A stretch of DNA of 63,792 nucleotides, filler included, from Octopus bimaculoides (GCF_001194135.2; 8 parts of 7 records of this genome joined end to end with filler, not necessarily neighbours in it), one strand, 5' to 3'; counted from the first letter of the whole stretch, positions 14,197-33,344 are shown. A program made the numbers and translations. Notes: a model not told the origin generated them from the sequence alone.

Positions 14197-15750
14197 TGAT
14201 GCCAGTGCCACCTGACTGGCACCTGTGCTGGTGGCACATAAGAAGCATCATTTGAGTGCGGTCGATGCCAGTGCCACCTGACTGGCACCTGTGCTGGTGA
14301 CACGTAAAAAGCATCATTTGAGTGCGGTCGATGCCAGTGCCGCCTGACTGGCACCTGAGCTGGTGGCACATAAGAAGCATCATTTGAGTGTGGACAATAC
14401 CAGTGCTGCCTGACTGGCACCTGTGCTGGTGGCACATAAGAAGCATCATTTGAGTGCGGTCGATGCCAGTGCCGCCTGACTGGCACCTGTGCTGGTGGCA
14501 CATAAGAAGCATCATTTGAGTGTGGACAATACCAGTGCTGCCTGACTGGTACCTGTGATGGTGGCACATAANNNNNNNNNNNNNNNNNNNNNNNNNNNNN
14601 NNNNNNNNNNNNNNNNNNNNNNNNNNNNNNNNNNNNNNNNNNNNNNNNNNNNNNNNNNNNNNNNNNNNNNNNNNNNNNNNNNNNNNNNNNNNNNNNNNNN
14701 NNNNNNNNNNNNNNNNNNNNNNNNNNNNNNNNNNNNNNNNNNNNNNNNNNNNNNNNNNNNNNNNNNNNNNNNNNNNNNNNNNNNNNNNNNNNNNNNNNNN
14801 NNNNNNNNNNNNNNNNNNNNNNNNNNNNNNNNNNNNNNNNNNNNNNNNNNNNNNNNNNNNNNNNNNNNNNNNNNNNNNNNNNNNNNNNNNNNNNNNNNNN
14901 NNNNNNNNNNNNNNNNNNNNNNNNNNNNNNNNNNNNNNNNNNNNNNNNNNNNNNNNNNNNNNNNNNNNNNNNNNNNNNNNNNNNNNNNNNNNNNNNNNNN
15001 NNNNNNNNNNNNNNNNNNNNNNNNNNNNNNNNNNNNNNNNNNNNNNNNNNNNNNNNNNNNNNNNNNNNNNNNNNNNNNNNNNNNNNNNNNNNNNNNNNNN
15101 NNNNNNNNNNNNNNNNNNNNNNNNNNNNNNNNNNNNNNNNNNNNNNNNNNNNNNNNNNNNNNNNNNNNNNNNNNNNNNNNNNNNNNNNNNNNNNNNNNNN
15201 NNNNNNNNNNNNNNNNNNNNNNNNNNNNNNNNNNNNNNNNNNNNNNNNNNNNNNNNNNNNNNNNNNNNNNNNNNNNNNNNNNNNNNNNNNNNNNNNNNNN
15301 NNNNNNNNNNNNNNNNNNNNNNNNNNNNNNNNNNNNNNNNNNNGCCTGACTGGCACCTGTGCTGGTGGCACATAAGAAGCATCATTTGAGTGCGGTCGAT
15401 GCCAGTGCCGCCTGACTGGCACCTGTGCTGGTGGCACATAAGAAGCATCATTTGAGTGTGGACAATACCAGTGCTGCCTGACTGGTACCTGTGATGGTGG
15501 CACATAAGAAGCATCATTTGAGTGTGGACAATACCAGTGCTGCCTGACTGGTACCTGTGATGGTGGCACATAAAAAGCATCACTTGAGTGTGGTCGATGC
15601 CAGTGCCGCCTGACTGGCACCTGAGCTGGTGGCATGTTTGAAGCACCATTCGAGCGTGGTCGATGCCAGTGTTGCTTGACTAGCACCCGTGCCAGTAGCA
15701 TGTAAAAAGCACAGTTTGAGTATGGTCGATGACAGTGCCATTTGACTGCC
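14197..15750 (+). repeat. 66-bp minisatellite array derived from the RTE 3' UTR subrepeat
   Basis: Unit gccagtgccgcctgactggcacctgtgctggtggcacataagaagcatcatttgagtgcggtcgat starts at 14201, 14267, 14333, 14399, 14465 and 14531, and again at 15401-15731 after a 772-N gap. It runs directly into an RTE tail. Confidence 0.9.
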
Positions 15751-15955
15751 CCCCCCCCCCCACTTCCATGCCAGTGGCACATAAAAAACACCCAGTACAC
15801 TTTCAGAGTGGCTGGCATTAGGAAGGACATAGAGCTGTAGAAACCTTGCCAGATCATTTTGGAGCCTGGTGCAGCTCCTGGTTTGCCAGTCCTCAATCAA
15901 ACCATCCAACCCATGCCAACACGGAAAGCAGACGTTAAACAACAATGATAATGAT
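15750..15955 (+). mobile_element. RTE LINE 3' tail ending in (GAT)n
   Basis: taggaagg...agctgtagaaac...ccaacccatgc...gacgttaaac(aatgat)n; same tail as that attached to the RT at 51.5-53.2 kb. Confidence 0.8.
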
Positions 15956-15987
15956 GAAGCTGTATATTCTTTTCTCATCCAACTTAC

Positions 15988-16101
15988 CTTCATGGCTTTA
16001 TTTAGATTGGTGGCATCAAACTCAACTGGTTTCATACAAAGACCAAGAATTGTATCACGGAAACAACCACTAAGTTCACTTTTCAATTCTTTTATTAAAT
16101 C
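15988..16101 (-). CDS. Annexin second core, exon L (DLIKELKSELSGCFRDTILGLCMKPVEFDATNLNKAMK)
   Basis: cag|GAT...AAG|gtaagt; 114 bp, phase 0/0, the same size as first-core exon D; 22/38 aa identical to it. Confidence 0.92.
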
Positions 16102-16743
16102 CTGTGAATAAAATGGTTTCAGAAATTATAATTTTTCGGCTTCTGTCTGTGTGGTTTATTTCTGATGTTGAAGGTGAAGGCAGGTGTTATTGTTTAATGA
16201 AGTTACACTTGAATGAGCAGAGCTACAACAACAGCTCCCCTGCTCTTCTATATTGTCCTTGGTTGAGCAGCCACTTCAGGCACCAGAATCCTTCACATCC
16301 ATCAAGATAAAGCGACTCAATCACTGGTTACAAATCTCCGACTTGGATCCGAGATAAGCAGAGGAGGGAGTCTGGATTAAAATTAGAATATAGCAGAGAG
16401 TGTCAGGGACAAAATTAGCTCACAGGGGGCCCAATATCATATATAAGATCCAAGATGATTCTTCGAAACATTTTCTTGGACAAAAAATGCATCATATGTG
16501 CCATCAAATATGAAATTTAGCTTTCTCCCTTTCAATCCTGAGTTCAAATCATCCAAGAGCTGCTTTTGATTTTTATATCTCTAAGTTCAGTAGAATATGT
16601 AAATCAATTTCAATATCTGATTGCAAAGAAAAACAAAAAAAGAAACAGGATGGTCATGGCTGGTATGCAATTGATCATAGATTTGTTTGATACAACAGCT
16701 GTGGGAATCCTGGGGCTTCAGAACAAAAAATGTGCTAACCCAC

Positions 16744-16838
16744 CTTTCCAAACATGGTCTTAAAGGTTTGCATTATTTTCTGTCTCTGGTTGCATGATCG
16801 ATGGGTTATTACATCTATGATGGCAGCTTCATCAGTAC
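16744..16838 (-). CDS. Annexin second core, exon K (GTDEAAIIDVITHRSCNQRQKIMQTFKTMFGK)
   Basis: Poly-T tract then cag|GT...AAG|gtgggt; 95 bp, the same size as exon C; 20/32 aa identical; GxGTDE motif. Confidence 0.92.
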
Positions 16839-17140
16839 CTGTAAAAAAAAAAAAAAAAAAAAGAACAAATATATTTTTCTTTCATAATTTAATATTTTAA
16901 GTAAAAAAAAAAAAACAGTATTTAATTATTAAGCCTCTGAATTCAAATCCTGTTGAAATCCTCTTTGTCGTTCATCTTCAGTTGTGGTGGGGTGGTGGTA
17001 GGGGTATATCTTATACATTTTACCTTTTATTTATTTCAGTCTTTACACTGCTGCCATGCTGGGGCACCACCTTGAGGGGTTTAATGAAGCCGAACTGCTA
17101 AGTTGTGAGGACACAAATAAACCAACATGTATCACAGTTG

Positions 17141-17308
17141 ATATATTGTATTTTAACGTGTATAAGGTACCCCTTAATTTTTGGGGCTTAAAATTTGGAA
17201 AAAAGGTTTTGTAAGGGATTATAATACTATCCATGTATAAGAAACTCCCATATTTTTTAACCTAATTTTTGACAAAAAAGGGTTCCTTATACACATTAAA
17301 ATACAGTA
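17141..17308. mobile_element. Tc1/pogo-like MITE
   Basis: TIRs attgtattttaacgtgtataagg / ccttatacacattaaaatacagta. Confidence 0.55.
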
Positions 17309-17639
17309 ATTCTAAGAATTTAAAGAACTAAGGTTAAGCAAAGGAACTAAATGATCAAATGATAGAAAATAGAATTCTTATTTTTATAGCCACATCTTCT
17401 CTGATGAAATGTATGAGACGAGATGCTATTGAGGCAGTATTTTATGGTCAGAAGCCCTTCCTGACACTAATCCTTGCTTGGTTTTCCCTCTGCCTATTTG
17501 AAAACTCTCCTGTACATTGACACAATTGTATGTGTGCACTTTGTCAAAAACTGACCTCCGTCTAATAAAAAAAACCTGCCCTGTTCCAATACTTGTCGTT
17601 ATGGAAACAGATTCATTTAAATTATAAAGTTCATTAAGG

Positions 17640-17955
17640 CACGTGAAAAAACATTTGAGCGAGTTCGTTGCCAGTGCCGCTAGACTGGCTCCTGTGCAGG
17701 TGGCACATAAAATACACCATTTTGAGCGTGGCCGTTGCCAGTACCGCCTGACTGGCCTTCATGCCGGTGGCACATAAAAGCACCAACTACACTCTCGTAG
17801 TGGTTGGCGTTAGGAAGGGCATCCAGCTGTAGAAACTCTGCCAGATCAGATTGGAGCCTGGTGTTGCCATCCGATTTCACCAGTGCTCAGTCAAATCATC
17901 CAACCCATGCTAGCATGGAAAGCGGACATTAAACGATGATGATGATGATGATGAT
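17640..17955 (+). mobile_element. RTE 3' UTR/tail copy
   Basis: 66-bp subrepeats, conserved tail and (GAT)n. Confidence 0.85.
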
Positions 17956-17966
17956 TAAGTACTTAC

Positions 17967-18291
17967 CAAAGCCCTTCATAGNNNNNNNNNNNNNNNNNNN
18001 NNNNNNNNNNNNNNNNNNNNNNNNNNNNNNNNNNNNNNNNNNNNNNNNNNNNNNNNNNNNNNNNNNNNNNNNNNNNNNNNNNNNNNNNNNNNNNNNNNNN
18101 NNNNNNNNNNNNNNNNNNNNNNNNNNNNNNNNNNNNNNNNNNNNNNNNNNNNNNNNNNNNNNNNNNNNNNNNNNNNNNNNNNNNNNNNNNNNNNNNNNNN
18201 NNNNNNNNNNNNNNNNNNNNNNNNNNNNNNNCGATGTTGTTTGCTCTGGTAAAGCAGACCTACGACCAAAGTCATGGCCGTCCAATGTTTT
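17967..18291 (-). CDS. Annexin linker / start of repeat 5, exon J (KTLDGHDFGRRSALPEQTTS...gap...AMKGFG). Could be more than one exon.
   Basis: tcag|AAA acceptor in phase 0; ends ATGAAGGGCTTTG|gtaagt in phase 1, like exon B. Interrupted by 250 N. Confidence 0.7.
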
Positions 18292-18319
18292 CTGACTATT
18301 TTTAAATAGATATCTTTTA

Positions 18320-18775
18320 TCTTTTACTTGTTTCAGTCATTAGGCTGTGGCCATGCTGGGGCACCATCTTAAAGAATTTCAATTGAAGGAATTTAGCCCA
18401 GTACTTATTTTTTAAAATTTTAAATTTTTTTGTAAAACCTGGTACTTATTCTATCAGTTTCTTTTGCTGAACTGCTAAGTTACAGGGATGTAAACACACC
18501 AACACTGGTTGTCAAGTGGTAGTGGGGGACAAATACATACACAAACACACACAAACACATAAATATACATGACAGGCTTCTTTCAGTTTCTGTCTACCAA
18601 ATCCACTCACAAGGCTTTGGTTGGTCTGAGGCTATAGTAGAAGACACTTGCCCAAGATGCNNNNNNNNNNTTGGTCTGAGGCTATAGTAGAAGACACTTG
18701 CCCAAGATGCCATGCAGTGGGACTGAACCCAGAACCATGTGGTTGGGAAGCAAACTTCTTAGCACACAGCCATAT
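18320..18775 (-). mobile_element. SINE family 1 copy
   Basis: Full reverse-complement match to family 1. Confidence 0.8.
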
Positions 18776-18839
18776 TGTTGTTGAAATACACTGACTTTGT
18801 TTCAATCAATTTTGAAAATAATGAAGAATTTAGCAAAAT

Positions 18840-19150
18840 AACTGGCACTCTGTCGGTTATGATGACGAGGGTACCTGTTGATCCAATCAGTGGAGCATCT
18901 TGCTTGTGAAATTAACATGCAAGTGGCTGAGCACTCCACAGACATGTAGTTCTCAGAGAGATTCAGTGTGACTCAGGATGTGACCAGGTTGGCCCTTTGA
19001 AATACCGTTGCTACTCATTTTTACCAGCTAGGTTGACTGGAGCAATGTGAAATAAAGTGTCTTGCTCAAGGACACAATGTGCCACCAGGAATCGAACTCA
19101 TGACTTTACGATTGTGAGCTGATTGCCCTAACCACTAAGCCACGTGCCTT
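18840..19150 (-). mobile_element. tRNA-derived SINE (family 3)
   Basis: Minus strand has A box tggcttagtgg, B box gttcgattcc and gtgtccttgagcaagacac. Its 3' part (gtggagtgctcagccacttgc...) is shared with 25930-26322. Confidence 0.75.
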
Positions 19151-19209
19151 CACTGGCTCAGCAATACTGATGTTATAACTTCACAGCTATTTTAATTGTG
19201 GAGGAGTAT

Positions 19210-19640
19210 TGTTAGAGCGTGATCATCGCTAGAACAACTGTCTGGCTTCCGTGCCAGTGGCACGTAAATAGCACCATTTGAGCGTGATTGTTACCAGCGT
19301 GGCCTTACTGGCACTTGTGCTGGTGGCATATGAACAAAACGTTCGAGCGAGATTGTTGCCAGTGCCACTGGACTGGCTCCTGTGCAGGTGGCACGTAAAA
19401 TACACCATATTGAGCATGGCCGTTGCCAGTACCACCTGACTGGCCCTTGTGCCGGTGGCACGTAAAAGCACCCATTACACTCTCTGAGTGGTTGGCGTTA
19501 GGAAGGGCATCCAGCTGTAGAAACTCTGCCAAATCAGATTGGAGCCTGGTGTAGCCATCTGGTTCGCCAGTCCTCAGTCAAATCATCCAACCCATGCTAG
19601 CATGGAAGGCGGATGTTAAACGATGATGATGATGATGAAT
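19210..19640 (+). mobile_element. RTE 3' UTR/tail copy
   Basis: Subrepeats, tail and (GAT)n. Confidence 0.85.
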
Positions 19641-19779
19641 ATCAGGTTGACAATAAAATACTGAAGTGTTCTGTACAATAGAGAATATCGTACTGGTTGG
19701 GAAAATACTGTATGTTGTGGGCTGTAATGATTGATGAAACGCTGTACTGTTATAAGAAGTACAATAAATCTATACTAAC

Positions 19780-19865
19780 CTGTATATCTTCGGATTCCAT
19801 TTTCACTTCTTTATCCAATTGTTTTACACTTTTATTCTGAACTGACTGCACCAGAGCTTTTCCTC
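19780..19865 (-). CDS. Annexin inter-core linker exon I (GGKALVQSVQNKSVKQLDKEVKMESEDIQ)
   Basis: cacttcag|GA...CAG|gttagt; 86 bp, phase 1/0, open. Phases match both neighbouring exons. Ends in MESEDIQ, like the N-terminal exon's MEVEDIE. Confidence 0.7.
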
Positions 19866-21121
19866 CTGAAGTGGTTTTATAATGCAAACATGATACAAGT
19901 ACACACACACAGACAGGTATACAAACACAAAAAGAGTACTCAATGGAAAATACTATTGTGACACACACACAGAGCATAAGACAGTGTGTTTGTAAACGTC
20001 ATGCGATATATTGGCAGAATGGTTGACTGTTGGACTAAATACCCAGCACTTGTTTCAACTTTTTTTTTTTTTTTACCAGTGACAACACTGGTGCCAAGCT
20101 CCACAAACCTTGTTTTGTTTTGATAAACATTTGTGACATGGAGAGACTTGCTGATCTTCCATTAAAAAATAAATAAATACTTTGCCCAGCCCTGAACCGT
20201 TTGGGGTAAATTTGAAATGACGCAAGCACATAGTCAACCCTGACTGACAAAAGCCCTAGATGTCTCTCTCCACTTAATAAAAATACATAAGTGACTCTTT
20301 ATACCTCACAAAATAAATAATCCATCATTGTCTTAGGAAATTTATGCAGTTCAGTGTTTTGTAATTCTATCCACTTATAACAAAACAATTCTTGTAAAAG
20401 CTTTAGAATTCCGTAGAGGTTTTATTTCAGTTGGTGATTCTGACATGAAATAGTATAAGCGCTAGAAGAGTTTTACTATTTTACTAGAATTTTGCAAAGT
20501 ATGGGAGGTTAAATGCTTTAGCCAAGAATTCTTTGATATAGTCATGAGATCATATAATTTGTAAAGTAATAGGAATGCTCATTTTAAGCTGATTTTGATA
20601 AAGATTCTGCTATGTAGAATTCGGTCTTTACACTTTTACTAACAAATTATTCATATAAATGCATGAAGGAATTTTTGTCTCAAAACTACTTTAACTACAA
20701 AGTAAACAACTAAAATCTGAGATGTAAAGTTATATAGATTTTGTTTAAACATATGGCAAAAAATGTCCAAAGTCATTGAATTTGTCTTCTGTTTTCTTTT
20801 GCATACATTTTGTAAAATAATCCAATCCAATTAAACTGGAATAAGCAAAAGTAAATTGTCAGTGTATTTGAATCATGAGGATGATTGATAGGAAACAGTT
20901 ACTTAAAATTTGGAAGAGCAGCATTTTAAAAGTTTTCACTGCATAGTCTTTCTAGAAATCACTACTTTCACAACAGCTGTTTGATATTGTTTAAACACTT
21001 GGCATTTGCAGTAAATAGTAGGATTAAATAGAAACAGTAAATAATAGCATTTGAATTTCTGCACATCCACTGCATAACTGCAAGGAAGTCCAGAGGGAAA
21101 ATAGAATATTTTAAGATATAC

Positions 21122-21155
<34 letters not shown>

Positions 21156-21208
21156 GTAACAAAAGAAAATTATTTATAAATAAGAGAAAAAGCCATATGG
21201 TAACTTGC

Positions 21209-21287
21209 CCATGACTTTTAAATCAGGAGGTTTTCCACCAGCGACTAAGGCCAAAATTATCTTGAGGTAATCTCCTGAGATATCACC
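21209..21287 (-). CDS. Annexin exon H (GDISGDYLKIILALVAGGKPPDLKVM). GC donor at 21208; read-through adds GKLPYGFFSYL* with stop at 21174-21176.
   Basis: acag|GGT acceptor; canonical end of annexin repeat 4; no stop at the usual position; G|gcaagt donor in phase 1. Confidence 0.85.
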
Positions 21288-21432
21288 CTGTAAAATAAAT
21301 AACAAAATATCAGTATGACATGCTAAATAAAACGGAATTTCCAATAGGAAAAATCAATTCCGCTGCAAAACAATAGGTGCAGACATGATCCTTTAGTACA
21401 TACACCTCTCTCTCTATATATATATACATATA

Positions 21433-21464
<32 letters not shown>

Positions 21465-21866
21465 TATCACATACAGGGTCCGCCATAAGTAACTATATAT
21501 TTTCTTTTGCTTGTAATTTTGTTGATACTTATTCAATTTTTCTATTTCATATGGCATTTGAAAGCTGAAATCTTCTACTTTTATTTCTTCCCCCCTCCCC
21601 ACTTCAGATATACTGTTATATCGATTATGTCCACCTGATTAACAAAAGTGCCAAAAAATTGCAAAATGAGAGAGAGAGATAGAGAGAGAAAGGGAGAGGG
21701 GGAGGGAAAGAAAGAGAGAGGAGAAAAGAGAAAAAGGGAGGGAAGGAAAGAGAATAAGAGAAGGGGAGAGGAGAGGGAAGGAAATAGAAAGAGAGAGGGA
21801 GAGAGAGGAATAGAGAAAGAAAGAAAAGAGAGTGGAGAGAGGAAGGGAGGGATGAAGAGAACTTAC

Positions 21867-22048
21867 AGAAATATAATCTTCCAATTTTTGGCTTGCAAGG
21901 TTGAAGAATTCTTTCTTAATCTGCACCATGTCAATTTCACAGCGTGACGTAACAACTCTGACCAAAGTATCATCATCCGTGCCCAGACCTTGCATCGATT
22001 TCATCAGTTGACGAGCAAAATAGTTGGCTTTGTTTTGGATGCATCGCA
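21867..22048 (-). CDS. Annexin exon G (VRCIQNKANYFARQLMKSMQGLGTDDDTLVRVVTSRCEIDMVQIKKEFFNLASQKLEDYIS)
   Basis: aag|TG...TCT|gtaagt; 182 bp; annexin repeat 4 motif. Confidence 0.95.
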
Positions 22049-22770
22049 CTTTAATGAGAGGAAAATCAGACGAGAGAGATCAGATTGGAAACAGACAGGG
22101 TTTTCAGCTTAATCTATCTACGTTCATATTGCATATCTGTCTGGATTAAACTAAATCAATTAAGATCAAAATAACTATTTCGTTTTTTTTGCCTTTTTAA
22201 TTAGGTTCAAAATCTTGTATTTTTTTTAAAATGCTCACTTTTCCATGCTTCCAAAGGTCAAATGAAATTTATTGAGGTAGATTATCTATGGCCGGATGCC
22301 CTTCCTGTGACCAACCCTCACCAGTTTTCAAGCAAGGTAATATTTCCTGGACATGTCCTCGCAGAATATCAGAAATGAATGACACTGCTTGTATAACAGT
22401 GACAATCATTTACAACTATCACATGACCTTAAGACAAGGAGGCACACACACACACACACAGAGGTTTCTTTCAGTTTCCATTTACCAGATCCACTAAAAA
22501 GACTTTGGTTAGCCTGGAGGTATAGTATAAGACATGTGTGCCTAAGGTGCCATACAGTGGAACTAAACCTGGCACCATGTGGTTGGGAAGCAGGGGACTG
22601 AACCCCAAATCATGAAACTGGGAAGCAAACTTCTTAACCACACAGCCATACCTGCACCTATGATAGATATAATTTATCAAAATCCTTAAAAGTGGTGCCC
22701 CAGCATGGCCACGATAGAATGACAAACTTGTGAAAGAATAAAAAGTAAAATCAAAGATGAAAACACAAAC

Positions 22771-23097
22771 CAATGGTGAGCATGCCAGTCAAAAGATCTC
22801 CACTGAGTTCACTCTTCAGGGCATCCTCAATGCTCTTACGGGAAATCTTTGCATATTCGACAAATGTGGCCCTCAGCTGAGGGTAACTTCGAGTGACGAG
22901 AATGGTATGGAATTTTGACTCATCGGTTCCCCATTTGCCTTCACCGGCTTGGTACATTGCTTTAGCATCCTGGTTGGCTTTGTTCCGGTCCACTTGTTTG
23001 CTTTCGCTTCGGTTGGCAGACACCAGTGCCACAAGAAGTCTCTTGAAATGTCCGGATGTTTCAGAAATTATGTCTTTCTCTAAGTCTCGATTGAAAA
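22771..23097 (-). CDS. Annexin exon F (end of repeat 2 and repeat 3; ...SETSGHFKRLLVALV...GEGKWGTDESKF...SELSGDLLTGMLTI)
   Basis: ttttcag|TT...G|gtttgt; 327 bp, phase 1/1; clear annexin motifs. Confidence 0.96.
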
Positions 23098-23247
23098 CTG
23101 AAAAGAACATGGGAAAGAAAAATAAATACTATTAATATAAAAATAGAAAATATTAATATTTTAGGTACAGGAGTAGCTGTGCATTTAAAAAGCTTACTTC
23201 CCAGCCATACGAGTATACATATATATATTTATATATACTTCCCAGCC

Positions 23248-23289
<42 letters not shown>

Positions 23290-23336
23290 NNNNNNNNNNN
23301 NNNNNNNNNNNNNNNNNNNNNNNNNNNNNNNNNNNN

Positions 23337-23387
<51 letters not shown>

Positions 23388-23390
<3 letters not shown>

Positions 23391-24276
23391 GGTGTTTCAA
23401 AAAATTTGATATCATTTCGCAATTTAATAACTTTGCCAGTTCTTGGTCAAATGACTTCAAATTTTAACAGCATGTGTAGAAACAGGTGAAAATTTCATGT
23501 TTAATGTCTGATATGTTTATCTTTTCAGGTATAGAAATGGCATTCGCTGGAAGAGAAAAGGTGTTTAATGTGTTGGAGTATGCTCAAACACAGTCGAACA
23601 AGACTGTGCAGCGTGCATTTGTGAGGGAGTTCTCTAAAACGTCACCAACGGCAATGCAGAATTGGAAATGGCACAAAAATTTCAAAGAGGAAAGCTGTCT
23701 GTGCAGGGCAAAAGGATCTGGACAACCACTAACATCAGAAGAGACGGTTGAGTGGGTTCGCCAAAAGCTCTTGCGAAGCCCCAAGAAGTCCATAAGAAGA
23801 ACAAGTCTGGAAACCCAGATTCCTTCAATGACAGTTTGGGGGCATCGTGAGGAAATGCTTGCTAATGAAGCCCTACAAGCTGCAGCTCATTCAGACCATA
23901 ATGGCAGATGACCAGCAAAAGTGCAAACATGGGCTACGTGAAGGGCCTGGTGTATGTCACCCCACTTCCTGCAAACCTAGAGGAACTCAAGCAGAGAATC
24001 ACTACCGCAAAGGAGACTGTTACCCAAGACATGCTGCAGCGTATTTGGGAGGAGCTGGACTACCGATTTGACATGTGCCATGTCTCAGGTGGTGTGCATA
24101 TTGAATATTTGTGAAATCATTCATGGAATCCACATACCTTTGAATTTCTCATTCGAATTTGGAGGAATAAATCTTATGTTGCTCAACATTAAGCCTGTTT
24201 AATTTCATTTGCTTTGATTAGGTAGTTTCTGTGATATTTACACCTCAAATGATATCAAATTTTTTGAAACACCCTG
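23388..24276 (+). mobile_element. Internally deleted Tc1/mariner-family transposon (HTH and C-terminus kept, DDE core lost)
   Basis: About 30-bp TIRs ca(a/g)ggtgtttcaaaaaatttgatatcattt. ORF pieces MAFAGREKVFNVLEYA...SPKKSIRRTS and GYVKGLVYVTPLPANLEELKQRI...HIEYL. Confidence 0.88.
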
Positions 24277-25090
24277 TGTGTATATGTGTGTGTGTGTATA
24301 TACATGACAGACAGATATATGCCATAATTTCAATGTCTAATTTTTCATGCTTGCACATGTTAAACAGATTAAAGAGATAGATTTTTCTATGTCCAAGATA
24401 CCTTTCCTGTTGCCAACTCTCACCTATTTCCAAATAAGGTAATATTTTCCCATGGTCAGGCAAGGTTTTCACAGAATATTGGAAATGAATATCATTCATT
24501 TACAACAATTTCATGCTATCAAGACAAGAACCCCAACACACACACGTGTGTGTGTGTATGTAACGGTGGTTCCCCAGCATGGCTGAAGCTCTTGAGCTGA
24601 AACTAGTAAAGAAAATATATATTTACACCCACACCCACACACAGACACATATGAATATTAATGTTGGTTATGATAAAAACAATTTTACATTAATCTGTTG
24701 GGTTACTCTACTCTTATGTAGAGTACAAATTTATTATTCTTTCACAAGAATATCACTGACACCAACTTCAAAATTTCAGACAGCTAAGCCATTGTTGGAT
24801 GATGGTTGAGCTGGCTGAAACTTTGAAGTCACTGACAATGATATTATTGCTTAAGAAATATAGATGTGAGCATCTTTCAATTTCCATCCACTACATTCAC
24901 TTACAAGCCTTTGGTCAGCCTGGGGTGAGAGTAGAAAACATTTGCCCAAGGTACTATGCAGGAGATAGACACCCCAAAACTACATGATTTCAAAACAAAT
25001 CTTTTAGTTACCCAACCATGCCCATCCCTTCTTAATAATACAGCTGTGTAACTGTACATAACAATTGTGGAACAGAATCAGTTGACTTAC

Positions 25091-25181
25091 TTTTCTTATA
25101 AGTTGAAATGATTTCTTTGATTTGAGCGTTTGAACGTGTGCAGAGGATTTCAATAAGGACGGTTTCATTAGTTCCAAGACC
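25091..25181 (-). CDS. Annexin exon E (GLGTNETVLIEILCTRSNAQIKEIISTYKK)
   Basis: ttccag|GGT...A|gtaagt; 91 bp, phase 0/1. Confidence 0.95.
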
Positions 25182-25929
25182 CTGGAAGAAATTTCAGCAA
25201 CTGAATAACTCATAGAATATAATGTGTTGAAATGGGATTGTTCTTCTAGAATAATATGGTGACATTCAACAAAGGAAATATAAGACATAGTGGCTGAATG
25301 GGTGTAGGTACATTCATCATTATCCATCAATTGCCAAAGGGTTGGACTAGTTGTGTTGCAGTATCTGTTCCAGCTCCTTGCATTCTGACATAGCGTTTGT
25401 GATAACAGATGTATGAAGCAGTGCTGGTTCCATGGAGAGCAAGGAGGCTTGCATGCCATGCATGTAAATCTCCCCACTTCTGCTGGGCTCCCTCAAAAAA
25501 AAAAAAAACTTGCCCTGGCCTGTCCATACATGGGTAGATCAATGGAAGCCCAAGCGCTGGCCTGGGGACTAAACAATGATTACATATACTGTCTTGTAAA
25601 TCTATGATATGTAATTTATATTAAATATTAAATACTAGGCATGTAATATGTAAGTTATGCTATATATTACATATTAGACATAGTGCTCTTAGCTTAGTTT
25701 TTCCTTGGGGCTGGCCAGATTGGAGCAATCTCGAGTATAACCAGCTGAAATTGCAAAGATAATCTGGAACTCAACTGAGGACAGAAAACTCTGAATGACC
25801 CCTCCTTGTTTTTTCTTGTCCCTTTTTTGAATCATCTGTCTGGATGTTTTGTTGTCCCATTTTTTGTATTCCTTTTTATATATTCAATCCTTAAGTTATA
25901 CTATATACTATATATACGACACTATATAC

Positions 25930-26322
25930 TGTTGTTGTTGTTGTTGGCACTCCGTCGCTTACGACGTCGAGGGTTCCAGTTGGTCCGATCAATGGAACAG
26001 CCTGCTCGTGAAATTAACGTGCAAGTGGCTGAGCACTCCACAGACACGTGTACCCTTAACGTAGTTCTCGGGGGATATTCAGCATGACACAGAGTGTGAC
26101 AAGGCTGACCCTTTGAATTACAGGCACAAGAGGAAACAGGAAGTAGGAGTGAGAGAAAGTTGTGGTGAAAGAGTACAGCAGGGTTCGCCACCACCAGAGC
26201 CTCGTGGAGCTTTTAGGTGTTTTCGCTCAATAAACACACACAACACCCGGTCTGGGAATCAAAACCGCGATCCTATGACCACGAGTCCGCTGCCCTAACC
26301 ACTGGGCCATTGCACCTCCACG
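25930..26322 (-). mobile_element. tRNA-derived SINE (family 3 variant) with (CAA)n tail
   Basis: Minus head tggcccagtggttagggcagcggactcg...ggttttgattccc; 3' end shared with 18840-19150. Confidence 0.75.
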
Positions 26323-26621
26323 ACACTATATACTAGATATGTGATAACTAAGTTATAGTATATATTACATGTTAGATATACAAAATGCAAGTTATACTAC
26401 ATATCAGTTATCAGATAGGTAAAGCATATCATATATGATCACTGTATCAATCAAATTATCAAATGTTGTTATACACAACTGGTCACAATGTGCTTCCTTA
26501 CATTGTTGTAGCTTTTGAATGTTGTCATCCTACTGGTTATGCACAGAGGTTGATTGATAAATATATAAAGTTAATATGTATGTTATATATCATTCACTAA
26601 AGAAGAATTATGTGAACTTAC

Positions 26622-26735
26622 CTTCATAGCATTTCGGAGGTGCTTGGCATCAAATTCTGCTGGTGCCATACATAGAGATTTCACACACTCACATAAATTG
26701 CCACTCAGTTCACTTTTCAATTCTGCAACTAAATC
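26622..26735 (-). CDS. Annexin exon D (DLVAELKSELSGNLCECVKSLCMAPAEFDAKHLRNAMK)
   Basis: ttttag|GAT...AAG|gtaagt; 114 bp, phase 0/0. Confidence 0.95.
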
Positions 26736-26820
26736 CTAAAATAAAGAAGGAACAGAAATAGATGTCATCATCCTAATTATTAATTCCAGCATTTTAAAAT
26801 ATATAATAGAGAAACAATTC

Positions 26821-27302
26821 TTAACCTTTTCGATACCAACCTACCTGAAACTGGCTCTGGCTCTATAGTACAAATGTCTTGTTTTCAAAAGTTTTGAATG
26901 AAAATCTTCCACCAAACCTTAGTCGCAATTCATATTCCTAACACTAGCTTAATGATAACTAAGTTATTTTACTAAATCCTTTGTTATATTTAAAATCAAT
27001 TGAAAGAAGCACGGAGCATCTCATAATAAATATGGTTACAAAAGGTTAAAAAATATAATAGAGAAACAATTCTTAATCCTTTTGATACCAACCTGGTTGA
27101 AACTGCCTCTGGCTCTGTAGAACAAATGTCTTGTTTTCATAAGTTTTGAATTAAAATCTTCTACCAAACCTTAGTCACAATTTATGTTCCTAACACCAGC
27201 TTAATGATAACTAAGTTATTTTACTAAATTCTTTGTTATATTTAAAATTAACTGAAAGAAACACAGAGCATCTCAAAATAAATACGGTAATGAAAGGGTT
27301 AA
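26821..27302. mobile_element. Two tandem TTAA-flanked piggyBac-like MITEs (26821-27049 and 27073-27302)
   Basis: Each copy is about 230 bp, reads ttaa-cc...gg-ttaa and has imperfect TIRs. The upstream flank aaaatatataatagagaaacaattc is duplicated as well. Confidence 0.65.
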
Positions 27303-27775
27303 CATCCACTTTTCCATACCTGTATGGGTCAGACAAAACTTGTAGAAGCAAGTTTTTCTGTGGTTAGATACTGTTTCTGTTGCTGACCTACACACCAGTT
27401 TCCAAGTAAGGCAATATCTCGCACAGGTATGGTGGCAAGCTGGTGGAATCATTACAGAGCAGAATGCTTAGCAACATTTCATCTATCTTTACGTTCTGAG
27501 TTCAAATTCCACCAAGGTTGACTTTGTCATTCATCCCTTTCAATCTCAATAAAACAAATACCAGTGGAGCACTGGGGTTGATGTAATTGACTTGGCCCCT
27601 CTCACAAAATTGCCGGCTTTGTGCCAAAATTTAAAACCAATGTTTCCCCGTAGTCCTTGCAGATCAATTTCTGGACATGTTTTGAGGAAGATTGCAAACA
27701 AATGACACCATTTGTATAAGCAGTGACCTTGTATTTGATTCAAGGCACACACATGAAAACAAGGAGAAAACACCA

Positions 27776-27812
<37 letters not shown>

Positions 27813-27819
27813 CATATAT

Positions 27820-27869
<50 letters not shown>

Positions 27870-28074
27870 GGCTTCTTGCAACTTTCACTTGCATATTTTC
27901 TATTTCTTTTTCTGTGCTGTCATGGGTTGGATGACTTCAACAGCGTCTCAATTTAATCATATCTTTCCCACGAGGGTGTGGTCCCTTACATCAATGTTAG
28001 AAACATACAGTTATGTCCATCAGTCTTCACTCCCCGATTTATTTTGCAAGTAATGAAATTTTCTTGTATCTTAC

Positions 28075-28169
28075 CTTTCCAAACATAGTTTTAAATTTCT
28101 TCAAAATTTCTTGACGTTGTGGGCTTGACCTGTATGCTAATACATTTATAATCATGTCCTCATCAGTTC
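28075..28169 (-). CDS. Annexin exon C (GTDEDMIINVLAYRSSPQRQEILKKFKTMFGK)
   Basis: ttttcag|GA...AAG|gtaaga; 95 bp, phase 1/0. Confidence 0.95.
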
Positions 28170-28399
28170 CTGAAAAGACAAAAAATATTCCATATTTAGC
28201 AAGGTTCTAATATCATTCTTATTTAGCCCAGGTCAGTCCTTATCGAGCATTCCAATCGTGATCACCCTATCGTTTATTAAGGCACAGTGCGAGACACCTA
28301 TCTTTGTCCCTCAATACCGTTAATCTCTCAAGTAACACAAAACCACCCCTGCCTCAATATTATGTCCCACTCCCAGCCAAAGAGTTTTGTCTTGCAAGT

Positions 28400-28640
28400 T
28401 GCTTGGTGACCCTGTCAGTGCTGGTGCCACATGAAATGCACTGATGCTGGTGCCACACAAAATGCACTGATGCTGGTGGCACATAAAAGCACCCAGTATT
28501 CTCAGTAAAGTGATTGGCAATAGAAAGGGCATCCAGCCATAGAAATCATGCTAAGACAGACAATGGAACCTGGTGCAGCTCCTGGTCTTACTAGCTCCTG
28601 TCAAACCCATGCCAGCACGGAAAATGGACATTAAGTGATG
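28400..28640 (+). mobile_element. Degenerate RTE 3' tail copy
   Basis: ggcacataaaagcacc...gaagggcatccagcc...ggacattaagtgatga. Confidence 0.65.
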
Positions 28641-28979
28641 AAAATGTATCAAGAATACATTATACAACGTGTCCTTGAAGCAGCAATTAAATCACCTTTA
28701 AATTATACCTAACTCTTTCCTGTCATAAGGAAGGCGATATCAGATAATGTAGTTTAGAAGAATCTTAGATTAATAATGTAAACCTGTGATGTGTGTCAGC
28801 AATAATATACTATGTACTTTTAGATGTCATGCAATGGAGGGTGAAACCAAAAAATCTCCCTCTAATATCATTTCCAAATATTTCTCTGTAAATATTTACC
28901 TAAAACTAAAACACATGTGTACACACCAGAGCCTGGTTAACCCTTAAGTAAAATAAGAACATGGTAAATGGTTTACAGC

Positions 28980-29313
28980 ACAAAAGAAATCACTTTAAAC
29001 TTGCTAAAATAATATTCGGGATGCCTTTGTCTCTACTAAGTATAGATGCAGATATGTTACCTAAGATTAATTTCAAAGATCTGATCAAAGATTTTGCAAC
29101 TCAAAAAGGTAGGAGGGGACTTTTCAAATATAAATAAAGTGGAATTAAACAAAAATAAACATTATTTTCCCTCTTACTGTTTTGTTTCGTTTTGAAAAAT
29201 AAAAATTTATTTTATGGTTTGTTATTGTTTATATTTTGAATTACATAATCTTTTATGGGGTCACCAAAATCTTTTAAGTGCTTCGGGCCTCGATGGGTCT
29301 TAATCCGGCCCTG
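28980..29313 (+). mobile_element. hAT transposon 3' remnant
   Basis: Translation LSLLSIDADMLPKINFKDLIKDFATQKGRR resembles the hAT C-terminal dimerisation region; ends in the TIR-like ggtcttaatccggccctg. Confidence 0.55.
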
Positions 29314-29365
29314 AAAGAGGGCATTTGTAAAATGAAGCAATTATATTAGAATATTTATATGTTAC

Positions 29366-29450
29366 CTAATCCTTTCATAGCTTCTCTTAGAAGTTCACAA
29401 TCTTGTTCAGCATTGAATTTGGGGTAACTCTTCACTGTTCCCTCTTGAGC
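29366..29450 (-). CDS. Annexin exon B (AQEGTVKSYPKFNAEQDCELLREAMKGLG)
   Basis: ccttacag|GCT...G|gtaaca; 85 bp, phase 0/1; canonical start of the annexin core. Confidence 0.95.
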
Positions 29451-29965
29451 CTGTAAGGTGAAACAGAAACAGACTATATACATAAAAAAAAACATTAAGA
29501 ACTGTGAATGACAACATTGTATATTGAGGTTTTATAAGTGAACCAAATAAATGTTGTTGCTATCAAAGTAATCTTTGACTGGGTAGCTTTATGTGAAGGA
29601 GCCTGCAGCGCTGTCTAAAGAGATGTGCATCCTGGCCAATTGCCCAGCAGTCTCAATGGATCAAGCGGGGGCCAATTTTGATATGTGTATGCTGTGGGTA
29701 ACTGTTAATAAATACTATAGGACTCAGTGCACTGATCTGGCCAGGGCTCAATAATGCTGCTTAGAAGGCTCTGGTAGTCAGCAAATCATATGTTAAGGCC
29801 TCATTCATGCAATCAGATTCAGTTTAATTTCCGGGATCATGTTGAACATTTTCCCCATGCTGTAGGGTGTTTGATCATTGAGGTTATGGGGTTGTGTTCA
29901 GTATCCCATACAATTGTTTGATTAAATTTTCATGGGCTGCACTCCTTACACATCTATTTGAGTGC

Positions 29966-30001
<36 letters not shown>

Positions 30002-31019
30002 ATTAAGATTCAGTTGAATTAGGTACTTAAGTTGAAGCACCAAGTCAGTCCAGTGTTATCCACAGCTTGAAGTAAGGTGAATAAAATCCAAGCAAAGCAG
30101 TATTTCTTCAAGGCTGGGTGTATTTTCATAGACGATTAAAAACAAAAGACACCACTTATATGACAGTGTTGTTCATTTACAACTCCCATGCAATTTCAAG
30201 TCACACACACACACACACACACACGGGTTTGTGTTATTATCATTCAACGTCTATATTGGTTTTCAGTGTTTGCTTTGGCAAGGTCTCCACAGCTGGATGC
30301 CCTTCCTAATACCAATTACTTTACAGAGTGTAATGGGTGCTTTTCATGGCCACCAGTGTTAATGGGTAACCTAGTAAAACATGAGGCTATCTATCTATAT
30401 ATACACACATATATATATACATACACACACACACAGGTTTTTCCCCGTTTCTGTCTACAAAATCCACTCACAAGGCTTTGGTTTGCACAGGGCTATAATA
30501 GAAAACGTCTGTCCAAGCTGTCATACATTGGGACTGAATCTACAACCAAATGACACTCCTATCACTTTTTGCAGATCTGATTATATTGCTGTCATGGGTC
30601 GTACTCCAACATTGGTCTTGGGGATATACTCCTTATATAACTGTTTCATTACAGGTTGTTAATGGGATACACACTCTCGCCCTTTAACACTGAACCTGGC
30701 CATATCCTGCCCAAATATTCTACCTGCTTTATGCGCAAACTGACCAGATCCTAACTCTCACACCTATCCTACAATGTCACTCTAGAAATAAACAATCATG
30801 GCATGGAAATCATGAAACTACAAGATAATGCATAATTAATTCAAAACCATGTGAATAAAAATGTATCGCATTTGAGTGAGTAATGTGAATACTAAGGGAT
30901 TAGACATTTTTATTGATATCATAAGCTGTACTCCTTAGGCATTTCATTATATAATATTTAAAAATCTATGCTCCTTACGCTCATGTTTAATTATATTAGT
31001 CATGAAATCAAATCAAATT

Positions 31020-31510
31020 GCTGATGTGGCCGATGACAGTACCGCCTGATTGGCACTTGTGCCAGTTGAATGTTAAAATCACATCCGAGCATGATCGTTG
31101 CCAGGGCCATGGATTGGCTCCCATGTCAGTGGCATGTAAAAAGCATCATTTGAGTGTGATTATTGCCAGCGTCGCCTTACCGGCACATGTGCCAGTGGCA
31201 TGTGAAAAATAACATTTGAGCATGGTCATTACCAGTGCCACTGGACTGGCTCCCATGCAGGTAGCACGTAAAAACACCTTTGGAGCGTGATCGTTGCCAG
31301 AATTGCCTGACTGGCCTTCATGTCGGTGGCACATAAAAGCACCCACTACACTCTCGGAGTGGTTGGTGTTAGGAAGGGCATCCAGCTGTAGAAACTTTGT
31401 CGATCAGATTGAGCCTGGTGTAGCCATCTGGCTCACCAGTCCTCAGTCAAACTGTCCAACCCATGCCAGCATGGAAAACGGACGTTAAACAATGATGATG
31501 ATGATGATCT
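31020..31510 (+). mobile_element. RTE 3' UTR/tail copy
   Basis: Several subrepeats, tail and (GAT)n. Confidence 0.85.
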
Positions 31511-31724
31511 GTGTTGCTTAGACATTGGTTAGAGGCTGTACTCCTTAGACATCTGATTAAATAGTGCTTATGAGATATACTTCTTACACAAGTGGTTGAT
31601 TAGATTTCAGTTATGATCTGTGTCATAGACATTCTTTAAAGGCTGTAATCTTTAGACATCTATTTGTGTAAAAGACAATGTATATCTGTGTTGTATGGAA
31701 GGTAAAAGTTTGGTCATATCCTAC

Positions 31725-32113
31725 CTCAATATCTTCAACTTCCATTTCAAAATAAGGGTCCATTTTTGGAATTTCCTTCTTTGGAGTTTCTTTGTTTGGT
31801 GGCTGTGGAGTTACAGCAACTGGTTTCTTTTTCTCAACGGTCTTAACTTGCGGTCTTACCTCAATATCCATAACTTTCTTTTCAAAAGCAGGATTTGATT
31901 TTGGAATTTTCTCCCGCAGCAGCTGTGGATTTACAGAAACTGGTTTGTTTTTCTCAACTGTGTTAGTTTGTGGCCTTACCTCAATATCTTCCATTTCCAT
32001 TTCAAAATATGGATCTGATTTTGGAATTTTCTTGGGAGTTTTCTTTTTCTCATCTGTGTCAGTTTGTGGTCTTGAAACATTTCTAGATTTGAGCAGTTTG
32101 TGACGAGGAGCAC
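31725..32113 (-). CDS. Annexin N-terminal exon A with three Pro/Lys/Glu-rich repeats (IPKxDPYFEMExEDIE)
   Basis: gctttatag|GT...GAG|gtagga; 389 bp open, phase 1/0, splices in frame to exon B. Confidence 0.8.
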
Positions 32114-32425
32114 CTATAAAGCAAAAATTGAATATAAAAGTCTGGAGTAATGGGTGCATGTTTTTACATGAAGTTGTATCTAAAATCAATTTAACATTAA
32201 ATTGATGGATCACTCAGGATTTTTTAGTAGAGTACCATGTTCATTAATTTTAATAAGAAACAGTTGGCAATAACTTTGAACTTACCACCCGTTATCAAAC
32301 ACTTTGATGACTGCTAGTAAGCCAGAACTTCAAAGTCAGTGTCAACATTATCCTTGTAAAAATTAATGAATACACACACACACACATCAAAGTTTAGCAG
32401 TTTAACAAAATGGCAAATATCTTAC

Positions 32426-32501
32426 GTTGAACACCAGGCTTTTCCATTATCAGAGTTATTCTGTAGCAATCTTCTTCATCTTCAAAGTCACTTGTCAAAA
32501 C
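32426..32501 (-). CDS. Probable upstream annexin exon (VLTSDFEDEEDCYRITLIMEKPGVQ); contains an in-frame ATG
   Basis: ctgttccag|GTT...C|gtaaga; phase 1 end joins exon A in frame. Confidence 0.5.
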
Positions 32502-32699
32502 CTGGAACAGATCGGTTAGGAGTTCAAATACAAGCAGAATCATACAAACAGAAACCTTGGGACAAATATGCAGGTTTAAACTTGAATTTCAGATTTGTCA
32601 TTTTTATTTGAATATTTTGAAAGAAATGTCTCGGCTTAAAATTCATTTCTTGTTGTCATTATGTGTGTATGTGTATGTAAAAATTATATACATGTACTA

Positions 32700-33040
32700 T
32701 AGAGCATGGTCGTTGCCAGTGCCGCATGAATGGCTCCTGCACCAGTGGCACGTAAAAAGCACCATTCAAGCATGGTTGATGCCAGTGCTGGCTGACTGGT
32801 CCCGTGCTGGTGGCATGCAAAAAGCACCATTCAAGCATGGTCGATGCCAGTACCGCCTGACTGGCCCTCGTGCTGGTGGCACATAAAAAGCATCCACTAC
32901 ACTCTCAGAGTGGTTGGCGTTAGGAAGGGCATCCAGCTGTAGAAACTCTGCCAGATCAGATGGTGCAGCCATCTGGTTCGCCAGTCCTCAGTCAAAAGCC
33001 ATGCAAGCATGGAAAGCAGACGTTAAACAATGATGATGAA
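32700..33040 (+). mobile_element. RTE 3' UTR/tail copy
   Basis: Subrepeats, tail and (GAT)n. Confidence 0.85.
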
Positions 33041-33052
33041 AATATATATATA

Positions 33053-33344
33053 GGCGTAGGAGTGGCTGTGTGGTAAGTAGCTTGCTTACCAACCACATGG
33101 TTCCGGGTTCAGTCCCACTGCGTGGCATCTTGGGCAAGTGCCTTCTACTATAGCCTCGGGCCGACCAATGCCTTGTGAGTGGATTTGGTAGACGGAAACT
33201 GAAAGAAGCCCGTCGTATATGTGTATATATATGTGTATGTGTGTGTGTATGTCTGTGTTTGTCCCCCCAACATCGCTTGACAACCGATGCTGGTGTGTTT
33301 ATGTCCCCGTAACTTAGTGGTTCGGCAAAAGAGACCGATAGAAT
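33053..33344 (+). mobile_element. SINE family 1 copy, truncated at scaffold join
   Basis: Close match to the family 1 consensus. Confidence 0.85.

What the first reader, a model, noticed from the sequence alone, without database searches (positions are those of the whole stretch)
15988..32501. Probable double-core (eight-repeat) annexin built by whole-gene duplication and fusion
Seen: a complete four-repeat core (exons B-H, with GxGT loops and D/E caps in all four repeats) has no stop at the normal end. It is followed in frame by two linker exons and a second core whose exons match the first in size and phase (95 and 114 bp; 42/70 aa identical). Only about 1.3 kb separates exon H from linker exon I, tight for a 3' UTR plus promoter plus first exon. 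Established: vertebrate ANXA6 is the textbook eight-repeat annexin. Inference: this is an independently derived octad annexin with a much longer linker (at least ~60 aa). The rest of core 2 is lost at the 14196 join.
Basis: partly seen in the sequence, partly recalled or inferred. Interest (0 to 1): 0.85.

Follow-up and report, generated by a model that had tools for sequence, protein, structure and literature searches.

The report
Partial protostome eight-repeat annexin gene
The piece holds the middle of one minus-strand gene for a two-core (eight-repeat) annexin, a member of an uncharacterised family already predicted in snails, annelids and a priapulid, which my trees place apart from vertebrate annexin A6.

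Summary
The exons are real. On the minus strand there is a complete four-repeat annexin core (Pfam Annexin, E 7e-93). It is followed by a linker exon and the first repeat of a second core, whose 95- and 114-bp exons match core 1 in size and phase (42/70 aa identical, as reported).

If exon H is read to 21174 it ends in an in-frame TAA (21176-21174). The join to exon I works only through an internal phase-1 donor, G|GCAAGT at 21209/21208 (a GC-AG intron), or a weak GT donor further upstream. The second "linker exon" is the normal first exon of core 2. Only its last 15 bases (…MKGFG|gtaagt, 17981-17967) are visible at the edge of the 250-N gap.

Fusion is supported by orthologues. Biomphalaria, Aplysia, Bradybaena and a transcript contig carry the same linker (z 10.7-12.9 against shuffles). 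The two snails with DNA in hand have a phase-1 intron at the same place.

The family also occurs in annelids and Priapulus, with a long Fn3_assoc N-terminus. In neighbour-joining trees vertebrate ANXA6 halves group with ANXA4/ANXA5 instead. So this octad is independent of ANXA6 but old and already in databases. The linker is about 47-50 aa, not 60 or more. No transcript from this species was available.

The parts
32426..32501 (-). Internal coding exon (76 bp, phase 0 in, phase 1 out): VLTSDFEDEEDCYRITLIMEKPGVQ. The ATG at 32447 is probably not the start codon.
   Evidence: It aligns to Bradybaena P0243 residues 332-360 (ILEAKMEDEGDGYSLNIVFEKPGTQR) and to a discrete Biomphalaria exon in L001 at 2191-2268.
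31725..32113 (-). Exon A2 (389 bp, phase 1 in, phase 0 out). It encodes the Lys/Pro-rich N-terminal tail and contains three tandem units, each ending in GATATTGAG|GTA.
   Evidence: (120-bp period). It is homologous to Aplysia and Bradybaena ...KKADPYYEKEIENIP.
29366..29450 (-). Exon B: start of core 1, repeat 1 helix A (AQEGTVKSYPKFNAEQDCELLREAMKGLG).
28075..28169 (-). Exon C (95 bp): repeat 1, [32 protein letters not shown].
26622..26735 (-). Exon D (114 bp): end of repeat 1 and start of repeat 2.
25091..25181 (-). Exon E (91 bp): repeat 2.
22771..23097 (-). Exon F (327 bp): end of repeat 2 and all of repeat 3.
   Evidence: It is 70% identical to P0243 residues 558-667.
21867..22048 (-). Exon G (182 bp): repeat 4.
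21209..21287 (-). Exon H as spliced in the octad model (79 bp): GDISGDYLKIILALVAGGKPPDLKVM + G. This is the end of core 1 and the start of the linker.
   Evidence: Colinear with the gastropod GGPPPKAK(S).
19866..21208 (-). Intron H-I, 1343 nt, with a GC-AG donor (gcaagt). If retained, it reads KLPYGFFSYL and then TAA at 21176-21174.
   Evidence: The donor is inferred from phase and from intron position in Biomphalaria and Aplysia. It has not been seen in RNA.
19780..19865 (-). Exon I (86 bp, phase 1 in, phase 0 out): linker GKALVQSVQNKSVKQLDKEVKMESEDIQ.
   Evidence: Scores against gastropod linkers give z 10.7-12.9, with 0 of 2000 shuffles reaching them.
17967..17981 (-). The visible last 15 bases of exon J (core 2, repeat 1 helix A): ...MKGFG|gtaagt, phase 1 out.
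17982..18231 (.). Assembly gap hiding the acceptor and about 70 nt of exon J.
   Evidence: tblastn finds no B-like exon anywhere between exons I and K. The end of the exon abuts the gap.
16744..16838 (-). Exon K (95 bp): core 2 repeat 1, GTDEAAIIDVITHRSCNQRQKIMQTFKTMFGK.
15988..16101 (-). Exon L (114 bp): end of core 2 repeat 1 and start of repeat 2. It is the last exon visible before the edge of the piece.

Best explanation
The piece carries the middle of one minus-strand gene, an orthologue of a protostome family of eight-repeat annexins. These proteins have two four-repeat, Ca2+/phospholipid-binding cores in one polypeptide, joined by a linker of about 47-50 residues.

Shown here:
- All exons of core 1.
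- The linker exon.
- The end of the first exon and the next two exons of core 2.
- Conservation of the linker peptide in four gastropod orthologues, and of the intron position and phase in the two with DNA in hand.

Inferred here:
- Exon H is spliced at the GC donor G|GCAAGT (21209/21208) to exon I. This skips the in-frame TAA, which lies 11 codons into the intron.
- The fusion arose when an upstream copy's last exon became spliced to the second (N-terminal-tail) exon of a downstream tandem copy. Exon I still resembles the tail exon A2 and keeps its phases.
- By analogy with ANXA6, the two cores could bind two membrane surfaces at raised Ca2+ and so bridge or reseal membranes.

The 5' exons lie beyond 33344; in orthologues they encode an Fn3_assoc domain and a long disordered region. 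Repeats 2-4 of core 2 lie beyond 14197.
For: - Gene model and phases.
- Pfam Annexin: four repeats (E 7e-93) and the core-2 fragment (E 2e-21).
- Linker homology. Biomphalaria P0001, Aplysia P0034/P0037, the Logan transcript contig P0002 (an uninterrupted 666-aa ORF on a 2181-nt contig) and Bradybaena P0243 all read ...GG(P/A)PP...SGKAFVESVK.KT.EQLD.EVK(L/M)E.EP..E.PTL.PF.GFN... between the cores. Alignment scores against three of these linkers are 71-83, against 22-24 +/- 4-5 for shuffles. Bradybaena was matched by the library search and tblastn.
- Same intron place and phase in Biomphalaria (AAAT|gtaatg ... ttttag|CTGGGAAAG) and Aplysia (ACAT|gtcagt).
- With the GC donor, the window's linker has the same length as that of P0002 over 39 residues, with no gap.
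- The end of exon J, MKGFG, matches gastropod KAMKGFG|TDE.
- Core 1 groups with gastropod first halves (0.96-0.99). K+L are slightly nearer to second halves (40-44 of 70) than to first halves (34-36 of 70) of the snail and annelid orthologues, apart from one second half at 37.
- The intron-encoded tail KLPYGFFSYL has no counterpart in Biomphalaria read-through.
- No AATAAA or ATTAAA occurs within 750 nt after the TAA, and no convincing first-exon candidate lies in the 1.3-kb interval.
Against: - No RNA from this organism, and no near-identical protein in 5.8 billion clusters. The H-I junction is therefore unobserved.
- The conserved intron position carries GC instead of GT here.
- Read-through gives a complete tetrad with a stop.
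- Exon I contains an in-frame ATG (MESEDIQ).
- Most of exon J and repeats 2-4 of core 2 are not in the sequence, so eight repeats are not seen directly.
- The trees are neighbour-joining only, with weak support deep in the protostome part.
Confidence: 0.8

Rival explanations
1. There are two separate tandem annexin genes. The upstream gene ends at the TAA of 21176-21174 as a tetrad with a 20-residue tail. The downstream copy has its own promoter and starts at the ATG in exon I (MESEDIQ...) or at an unseen first exon.
For: An in-frame stop follows if exon H is read through. There is no GT donor at the conserved position. There is an ATG in exon I. Some database 'annexin A6-like' entries, such as Mya P0009, look like two tandem genes merged by annotation.
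Against: - The 20 codons of exon I upstream of that ATG (GKALVQSVQNKSVKQLDKEV) are conserved with gastropod linkers, which lie inside octad ORFs, one of them on a transcript contig.
- Exon I opens with a phase-1 AG acceptor, as in the snails.
- The tail GGKPPDLKVM is colinear with GGPPPQIASK.
- No plausible first exon and no nearby poly(A) signal were found.
Confidence: 0.08
2. The gene is an octad gene whose junction is damaged or mis-assembled in this genome. The GT-to-GC change at the donor is either a sequencing error in a gap-rich draft or a real mutation that has uncoupled the two halves.
For: The assembly is poor in this region: three gaps, one of them false. The snails with DNA in hand use GT at this site.
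Against: GC donors with the remaining consensus intact (G|GCAAGT) are a recognised minor class of functional donors (general knowledge, not tested here). Exons I, K and L keep open frames, good splice sites and conserved residues.
Confidence: 0.07
3. The gene makes both forms. Splicing at the GC donor gives the octad. Retention of intron H-I, or early polyadenylation, gives a tetrad ending in ...KLPYGFFSYL.
For: The first stop in the retained intron comes only 11 codons in. The donor is of a non-standard class.
Against: The read-through tail is not conserved in Biomphalaria. The nearest AATAAA is 750 nt downstream. There are no expression data.
Confidence: 0.05

Closest known systems
Predicted gastropod eight-repeat annexins: Biomphalaria glabrata 'annexin A6' (P0001), Aplysia californica 'annexin A4, partial' (P0034/P0037), Bradybaena similaris BFZ22448.1 (P0243)
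   Same: Core 1 is 65-66% identical. They share the linker sequence, the phase-1 intron before GKA, the phase-0 intron after the linker exon, the Lys/Pro-rich tail ending ...DPYFE.E.E.I., and the preceding EDE.D.Y...EKPG.QR exon.
   Different: The window has a GC rather than a GT donor at the junction intron, two extra residues in the linker relative to Biomphalaria and Aplysia, and a triplicated unit in the tail exon. Only five of the eight repeats are visible.
Annelid and priapulid Fn3_assoc + eight-repeat annexins: Dimorphilus CAD5122128.1 (P0393), Capitella CAPTEDRAFT_158666 (P0004), Priapulus XP_014664979.1 (P0244)
   Same: The two full-length models (Dimorphilus, Priapulus) have a long N-terminus with an Fn3_assoc/CHB_HEX_C_1 domain followed by the annexin repeats. 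Dimorphilus has eight; the Priapulus model has 11, probably with a duplicated segment. The shorter Capitella model shows only the eight repeats. Core identity is 55-60%. The mollusc and annelid second halves group together (0.54-0.66).
   Different: Their linker sequences are not detectably similar to the window's (z -0.3 and 0.7 for the two annelid linkers tested). In Capitella the end of core 1 and the linker form one exon, with no H-I intron.
Vertebrate annexin A6 (ANXA6)
   Same: Eight repeats in two cores joined by a linker. Core identity is 45-50%. Canonical type II Ca2+ motifs are present.
   Different: ANXA6 halves group with vertebrate ANXA5 and ANXA4 (0.91-0.93) rather than with the protostome octad halves. 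The linkers are unrelated (z -1.4). ANXA6 has a short N-terminus with no Fn3_assoc region.

Membership tests
Annexin superfamily (Pfam PF00191) | Four or more annexin repeats of about 70 residues | tested here: met
   Four repeats in core 1, E 7.2e-93 and 305 bits against a cut-off of 25. The core-2 fragment scores 76 bits.
Annexin superfamily (Pfam PF00191) | Type II Ca2+ site: GxGT loop with an acidic cap 38 residues after the T | tested here: met
   Strict in core-1 repeats 1, 2 and 4 and in core-2 repeat 1. Repeat 3 has KWGT plus an E cap.
Eight-repeat (octad) annexin architecture | Two four-repeat cores in one reading frame or transcript | tested here: inconclusive
   Five repeats are visible. 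The H-I junction is in frame only through a GC-AG donor or a weak GT donor. Orthologues are continuous. There is no RNA for this organism, and repeats 6-8 lie off the piece.
Protostome Fn3_assoc + octad annexin family (the gastropod, annelid and priapulid predictions) | Mollusc-type linker ...GG.PP...GKA(F/L)V.SV..K...QLD.EVK.E.E... with a phase-1 intron before GKA | tested here: met
Protostome Fn3_assoc + octad annexin family (the gastropod, annelid and priapulid predictions) | Long N-terminal region with an Fn3_assoc/CHB_HEX_C_1 domain | not testable with these tools
   The domain is at residues ~23-109 of P0243, P0244 and P0393. In the window only the exon homologous to P0243 332-360 is present. 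Earlier exons would lie beyond 33344.
Vertebrate ANXA6 orthology group | Halves grouping with the ANXA6 N- and C-halves in a phylogeny | tested here: not met
   Core 1 groups with gastropod first halves (0.96-0.99). ANXA6 halves form a clade with ANXA4/ANXA5 (0.91-0.92) that excludes it. Neighbour-joining only.

The most novel reading that the evidence does not exclude
Protostomes have their own ancient two-core annexin, joined to an Fn3_assoc N-terminal domain. It arose independently of vertebrate ANXA6. I could not find it described in any paper of the held library; it exists only as automatic annotations such as 'annexin A6' or 'hypothetical protein'. In this genome its junction intron has a GC donor with a stop 11 codons inside. 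Splicing versus retention at that intron could therefore switch the product between a one-core and a two-core annexin.
Probability: 0.25. Interest if true: 0.5.

Novelty: new member of a known kind. Interest (0 to 1): 0.3.

Why it matters
It gives a corrected partial gene model for a gap-rich locus. It shows that the 'annexin A6' labels on mollusc proteins are misleading, because in my trees the protostome octad is a separate invention from ANXA6. Two independent origins of the same two-core design would suggest that linking two annexin cores is functionally useful, for example for bridging membranes. The family could then serve as a natural comparison for work on ANXA6. For this window alone the result is ordinary: one more member of a family already present in public databases.

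Tried and rejected
- I first modelled core 1 as a stand-alone 472-aa gene starting at the ATG of 32447 and ending at the TAA of 21174. The start was rejected after P0243 and the Biomphalaria flank showed that this exon is internal. The stop was demoted once the linker homology appeared.
- I looked for the missing core-2 first exon by tblastn (E up to 50) and by motif regex between exons I and K. Nothing turned up. Its end was then found at the gap edge.
- I looked for a phase-0 or phase-2 route from H to I. The two AG acceptors nearest the start of the conserved exon I are both phase 1, so AAA|GTCATG (phase 0) and CAA|GTTACC (phase 2) do not fit (sequence).
- A word-index search with the junction peptide gave only two distant hits. 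A search with the N-terminal half gave no close relative. The species therefore remains unidentified.
- The look-up of encoding contigs had no record for P0243.
- Five literature searches and one paper read found no description of invertebrate eight-repeat annexins. A 2013 survey (PMC3795353) stated that no molluscan annexin had yet been identified.
- Rfam gave no hit in the piece. Pfam gave no hit for the plus-strand ORF at 23486-23911.


Full report
**Layout.** The usable piece is 14197-33344. It is about 37% G+C and holds N runs at 14572-15343, 17982-18231, 18661-18670 and 23290-23336. All annexin-like reading frames are on the minus strand.

**Core 1.** Reading the splice sites gives these exons:

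| Exon | Coordinates | Length |
|---|---|---|
| internal exon before A2 | 32501-32426 | 76 bp |
| A2 | 32113-31725 | 389 bp |
| B | 29450-29366 | 85 bp |
| C | 28169-28075 | 95 bp |
| D | 26735-26622 | 114 bp |
| E | 25181-25091 | 91 bp |
| F | 23097-22771 | 327 bp |
| G | 22048-21867 | 182 bp |
| H | from 21287 | see below |

- Every junction has an AG acceptor and, apart from exon H, a GT donor. The phases agree throughout.
- The product has four Pfam Annexin repeats (E 7.2e-93).
- GxGT-38-D/E sites are present in repeats 1, 2 and 4. Repeat 3 has the usual KWGT form with an E cap.
- The 47-N gap at 23290-23336 lies in intron E-F between microsatellites. It costs no residues, because core 1 aligns to Bradybaena P0243 residues 430-742 over equal lengths.

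**Linker and core 2.**
- Exon I is 19865-19780, bounded by cag|GA...CAG|gttagt. It enters in phase 1 and leaves in phase 0, and encodes GKALVQSVQNKSVKQLDKEVKMESEDIQ.
- Exons K (16838-16744, 95 bp) and L (16101-15988, 114 bp) repeat the sizes and phases of C and D. They are 42/70 identical to C+D.
- tblastn found no B-like exon between I and K.
- The 15 bases just below the 250-N gap read CT ATG AAG GGC TTT G|gtaagt, that is ...MKGFG with a phase-1 donor. This joins K to give MKGFG-TDEAAII.
- So the gap at 17982-18231 swallows the acceptor and most of the first exon of core 2. This exon is not a second linker exon.
- The 10-N gap at 18661-18670 is intronic and is flanked by the same 40 bases on both sides.

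**Is it one gene?** The database answers this better than the window does.
- A search with core 1 returned eight-repeat annexins from molluscs, an annelid, amphioxus, a centipede and vertebrates.
- The gastropod sequences carry, between their two cores, GGPPPKAKSGKAFVESVKNKTDEQLDEEVKLENEPKKEDPTLLPFPGFNAEQDCE.... This is colinear with the tail of exon H, then exon I, then the missing exon J.
- Exon I scores 71-83 against three gastropod linkers, while shuffles score 22-24 +/- 4-5 (z 10.7-12.9; 0 of 2000 shuffles reach the observed score). It shows nothing against the annelid or ANXA6 linkers.
- One of these octads, P0002, is an uninterrupted 666-aa ORF on a 2181-nt Logan contig. That is most simply a transcript.
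- In Biomphalaria genomic DNA the junction is AAAT|gtaatg ... ttttag|CTGGGAAAG. This is a phase-1 intron one codon before GKA, followed by a phase-0 donor after the linker exon.
- Aplysia has the same arrangement (ACAT|gtcagt).
- In Capitella the end of core 1 and the linker are one exon.

**The junction in the window.** Both possible acceptors of exon I are phase 1. Exon H offers only two phase-1 donors:
- G|GCAAGT after ...AAA GTC ATG G, with 21209 as the last exon base.
- The weak GCTG|GTGGAA.

The first sits at the conserved position. It keeps GGKPPDLKVM, which matches GGPPPQIASK. It gives a linker that aligns without gaps to P0002 over 39 residues. I therefore model a GC-AG intron of 1343 nt. 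This step is inferred and has not been observed in RNA.

**Arguments bearing on two separate genes.**
- The part of exon I upstream of its ATG is conserved as protein.
- The read-through tail is not conserved in Biomphalaria.
- The interval holds no AATAAA or ATTAAA within 750 nt of the TAA, and no convincing first exon.
- In favour of two genes, there is no RNA and no close relative in the databases.

**Origin of the fusion.** Exon I resembles the last unit of exon A2: KEIPKMDPYFEMEVEDIE against KSVKQLDKEVKMESEDIQ (score 38 against 18.9 +/- 3.2; 0 of 2000 shuffles). It shares A2's phases. This fits a fusion in which the last exon of an upstream copy was spliced to the tail exon of a downstream copy, skipping that copy's 5' exons.

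**How old, and how related to ANXA6?**
- An exhaustive HMMER search with exons G+H+I found Bradybaena similaris BFZ22448.1 (1096 aa), which matches query positions 1-114 of 116, linker included. It also found Priapulus XP_014664979.1.
- Dimorphilus CAD5122128.1 (1094 aa) shares a 90% cluster with P0003.
- All three have an N-terminal Fn3_assoc/CHB_HEX_C_1 domain followed by annexin repeats. Bradybaena and Dimorphilus have eight; the Priapulus model has 11, probably with a duplicated segment.
- The window's exon 32501-32426 aligns to P0243 residues 332-360. Biomphalaria has the same discrete exon upstream of its truncated model. So the ATG at 32447 is internal and the gene starts beyond the piece.
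- In neighbour-joining trees with bootstrap, core 1 joins the gastropod first halves (0.96-0.99).
- The mollusc and annelid second halves join each other (0.54-0.66).
- The ANXA6 first half joins ANXA5 (0.91-0.92).
- All ANXA6 halves together with ANXA4 and ANXA5 form a vertebrate clade (0.91-0.92).
- The Strigamia, Branchiostoma, Mya and Lgn5 (P0005, an unnamed Logan contig) halves each pair within their own protein. This points to further independent fusions or to merged gene models.
- Deep protostome branches are unresolved.

**Linker length.** From GG to the F of FNAEQD is 45 aa in Biomphalaria and 39 aa in ANXA6. The window shows 37 aa plus the hidden start of exon J, so about 47-50 aa. 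This is not 60 or more.

**Function.** No function was tested. By analogy with ANXA6 (general knowledge, and the reviews listed), two Ca2+-dependent phospholipid-binding cores on a flexible linker could attach to two membrane surfaces.

**Verdict.** The octad reading is well supported by comparison but unproven for this organism. The octad is independent of ANXA6 in my trees, but it is old and already present in public databases. It is therefore a new member of a known, though uncharacterised, kind.

Noticed in passing
window 31725-32113 (minus strand): The N-terminal tail exon holds three tandem copies of a unit of about 40 aa (...IPKSDPYFEMEMEDIE). Each copy ends in GATATTGAG followed by GTAAGG, GTAAGA or GTAGGA, with last exon bases at 31980, 31860 and 31725. 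All three are phase 0, so they could act as alternative donors and give three tail lengths. The duplication seems to have copied the splice donor along with the coding sequence.
   Followed up: partly
window 18611-18720: The 10-N gap at 18661-18670 is flanked on both sides by the same 40 bases (GCATCTTGGGCAAGTGTCTTCTACTATAGCCTCAGACCAA). It looks like two overlapping contig ends joined with a spacer, not missing sequence.
   Followed up: yes
window 14198-15957, 17615-17951, 19238-19638, 31108-31507, 32702-32977: At least five same-orientation copies of a SINE-like element of about 350-400 bp. It has internal 65-67-bp tandem subrepeats and a (GAT)n-rich end. One array is expanded to at least 6 units on each side of the 772-N gap. 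One copy begins about 10 nt after the donor of exon J. These elements produce long spurious ORFs (YVPPAQVPVRRHWHRPHSNDAS...). Rfam has no match.
   Followed up: partly
window 18529-18772, 22460-22547, 24866-24953, 30433-30548, 33063-33256: A second interspersed repeat family, present in both orientations within introns and upstream of the first visible exon.
   Followed up: no
window 23486-23911 (plus strand): A 141-aa ORF in intron E-F on the opposite strand. To the eye it resembles a transposon helix-turn-helix region, but Pfam gives no hit at E <= 0.01.
   Followed up: partly
L001 179-286, 2191-2268, 2730-2789, 2926-3015 (Biomphalaria): The Biomphalaria 'annexin A6' model (P0001) starts at MKGLGTDE and is truncated. 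Upstream exons for the long N-terminal region and for repeat-1 helix A lie in the flank of the annotated gene.
   Followed up: partly
P0009 (Mya arenaria 'annexin A6-like') and P0244 (Priapulus): The Mya linker is about 95 residues with no annexin similarity, followed by a second Met and a full N-terminus, and its two halves group with a Haliotis tetrad. It is probably two tandem genes merged by annotation. The Priapulus model has 11 repeats with a near-identical duplicated segment, which is probably an assembly or annotation artefact.
   Followed up: no
window 21663-21841: A (GA)n-rich low-complexity tract begins about 25 nt downstream of the donor of exon G. It keeps the frame open for about 85 codons beyond the exon and so gives a misleadingly long ORF.
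   Followed up: no
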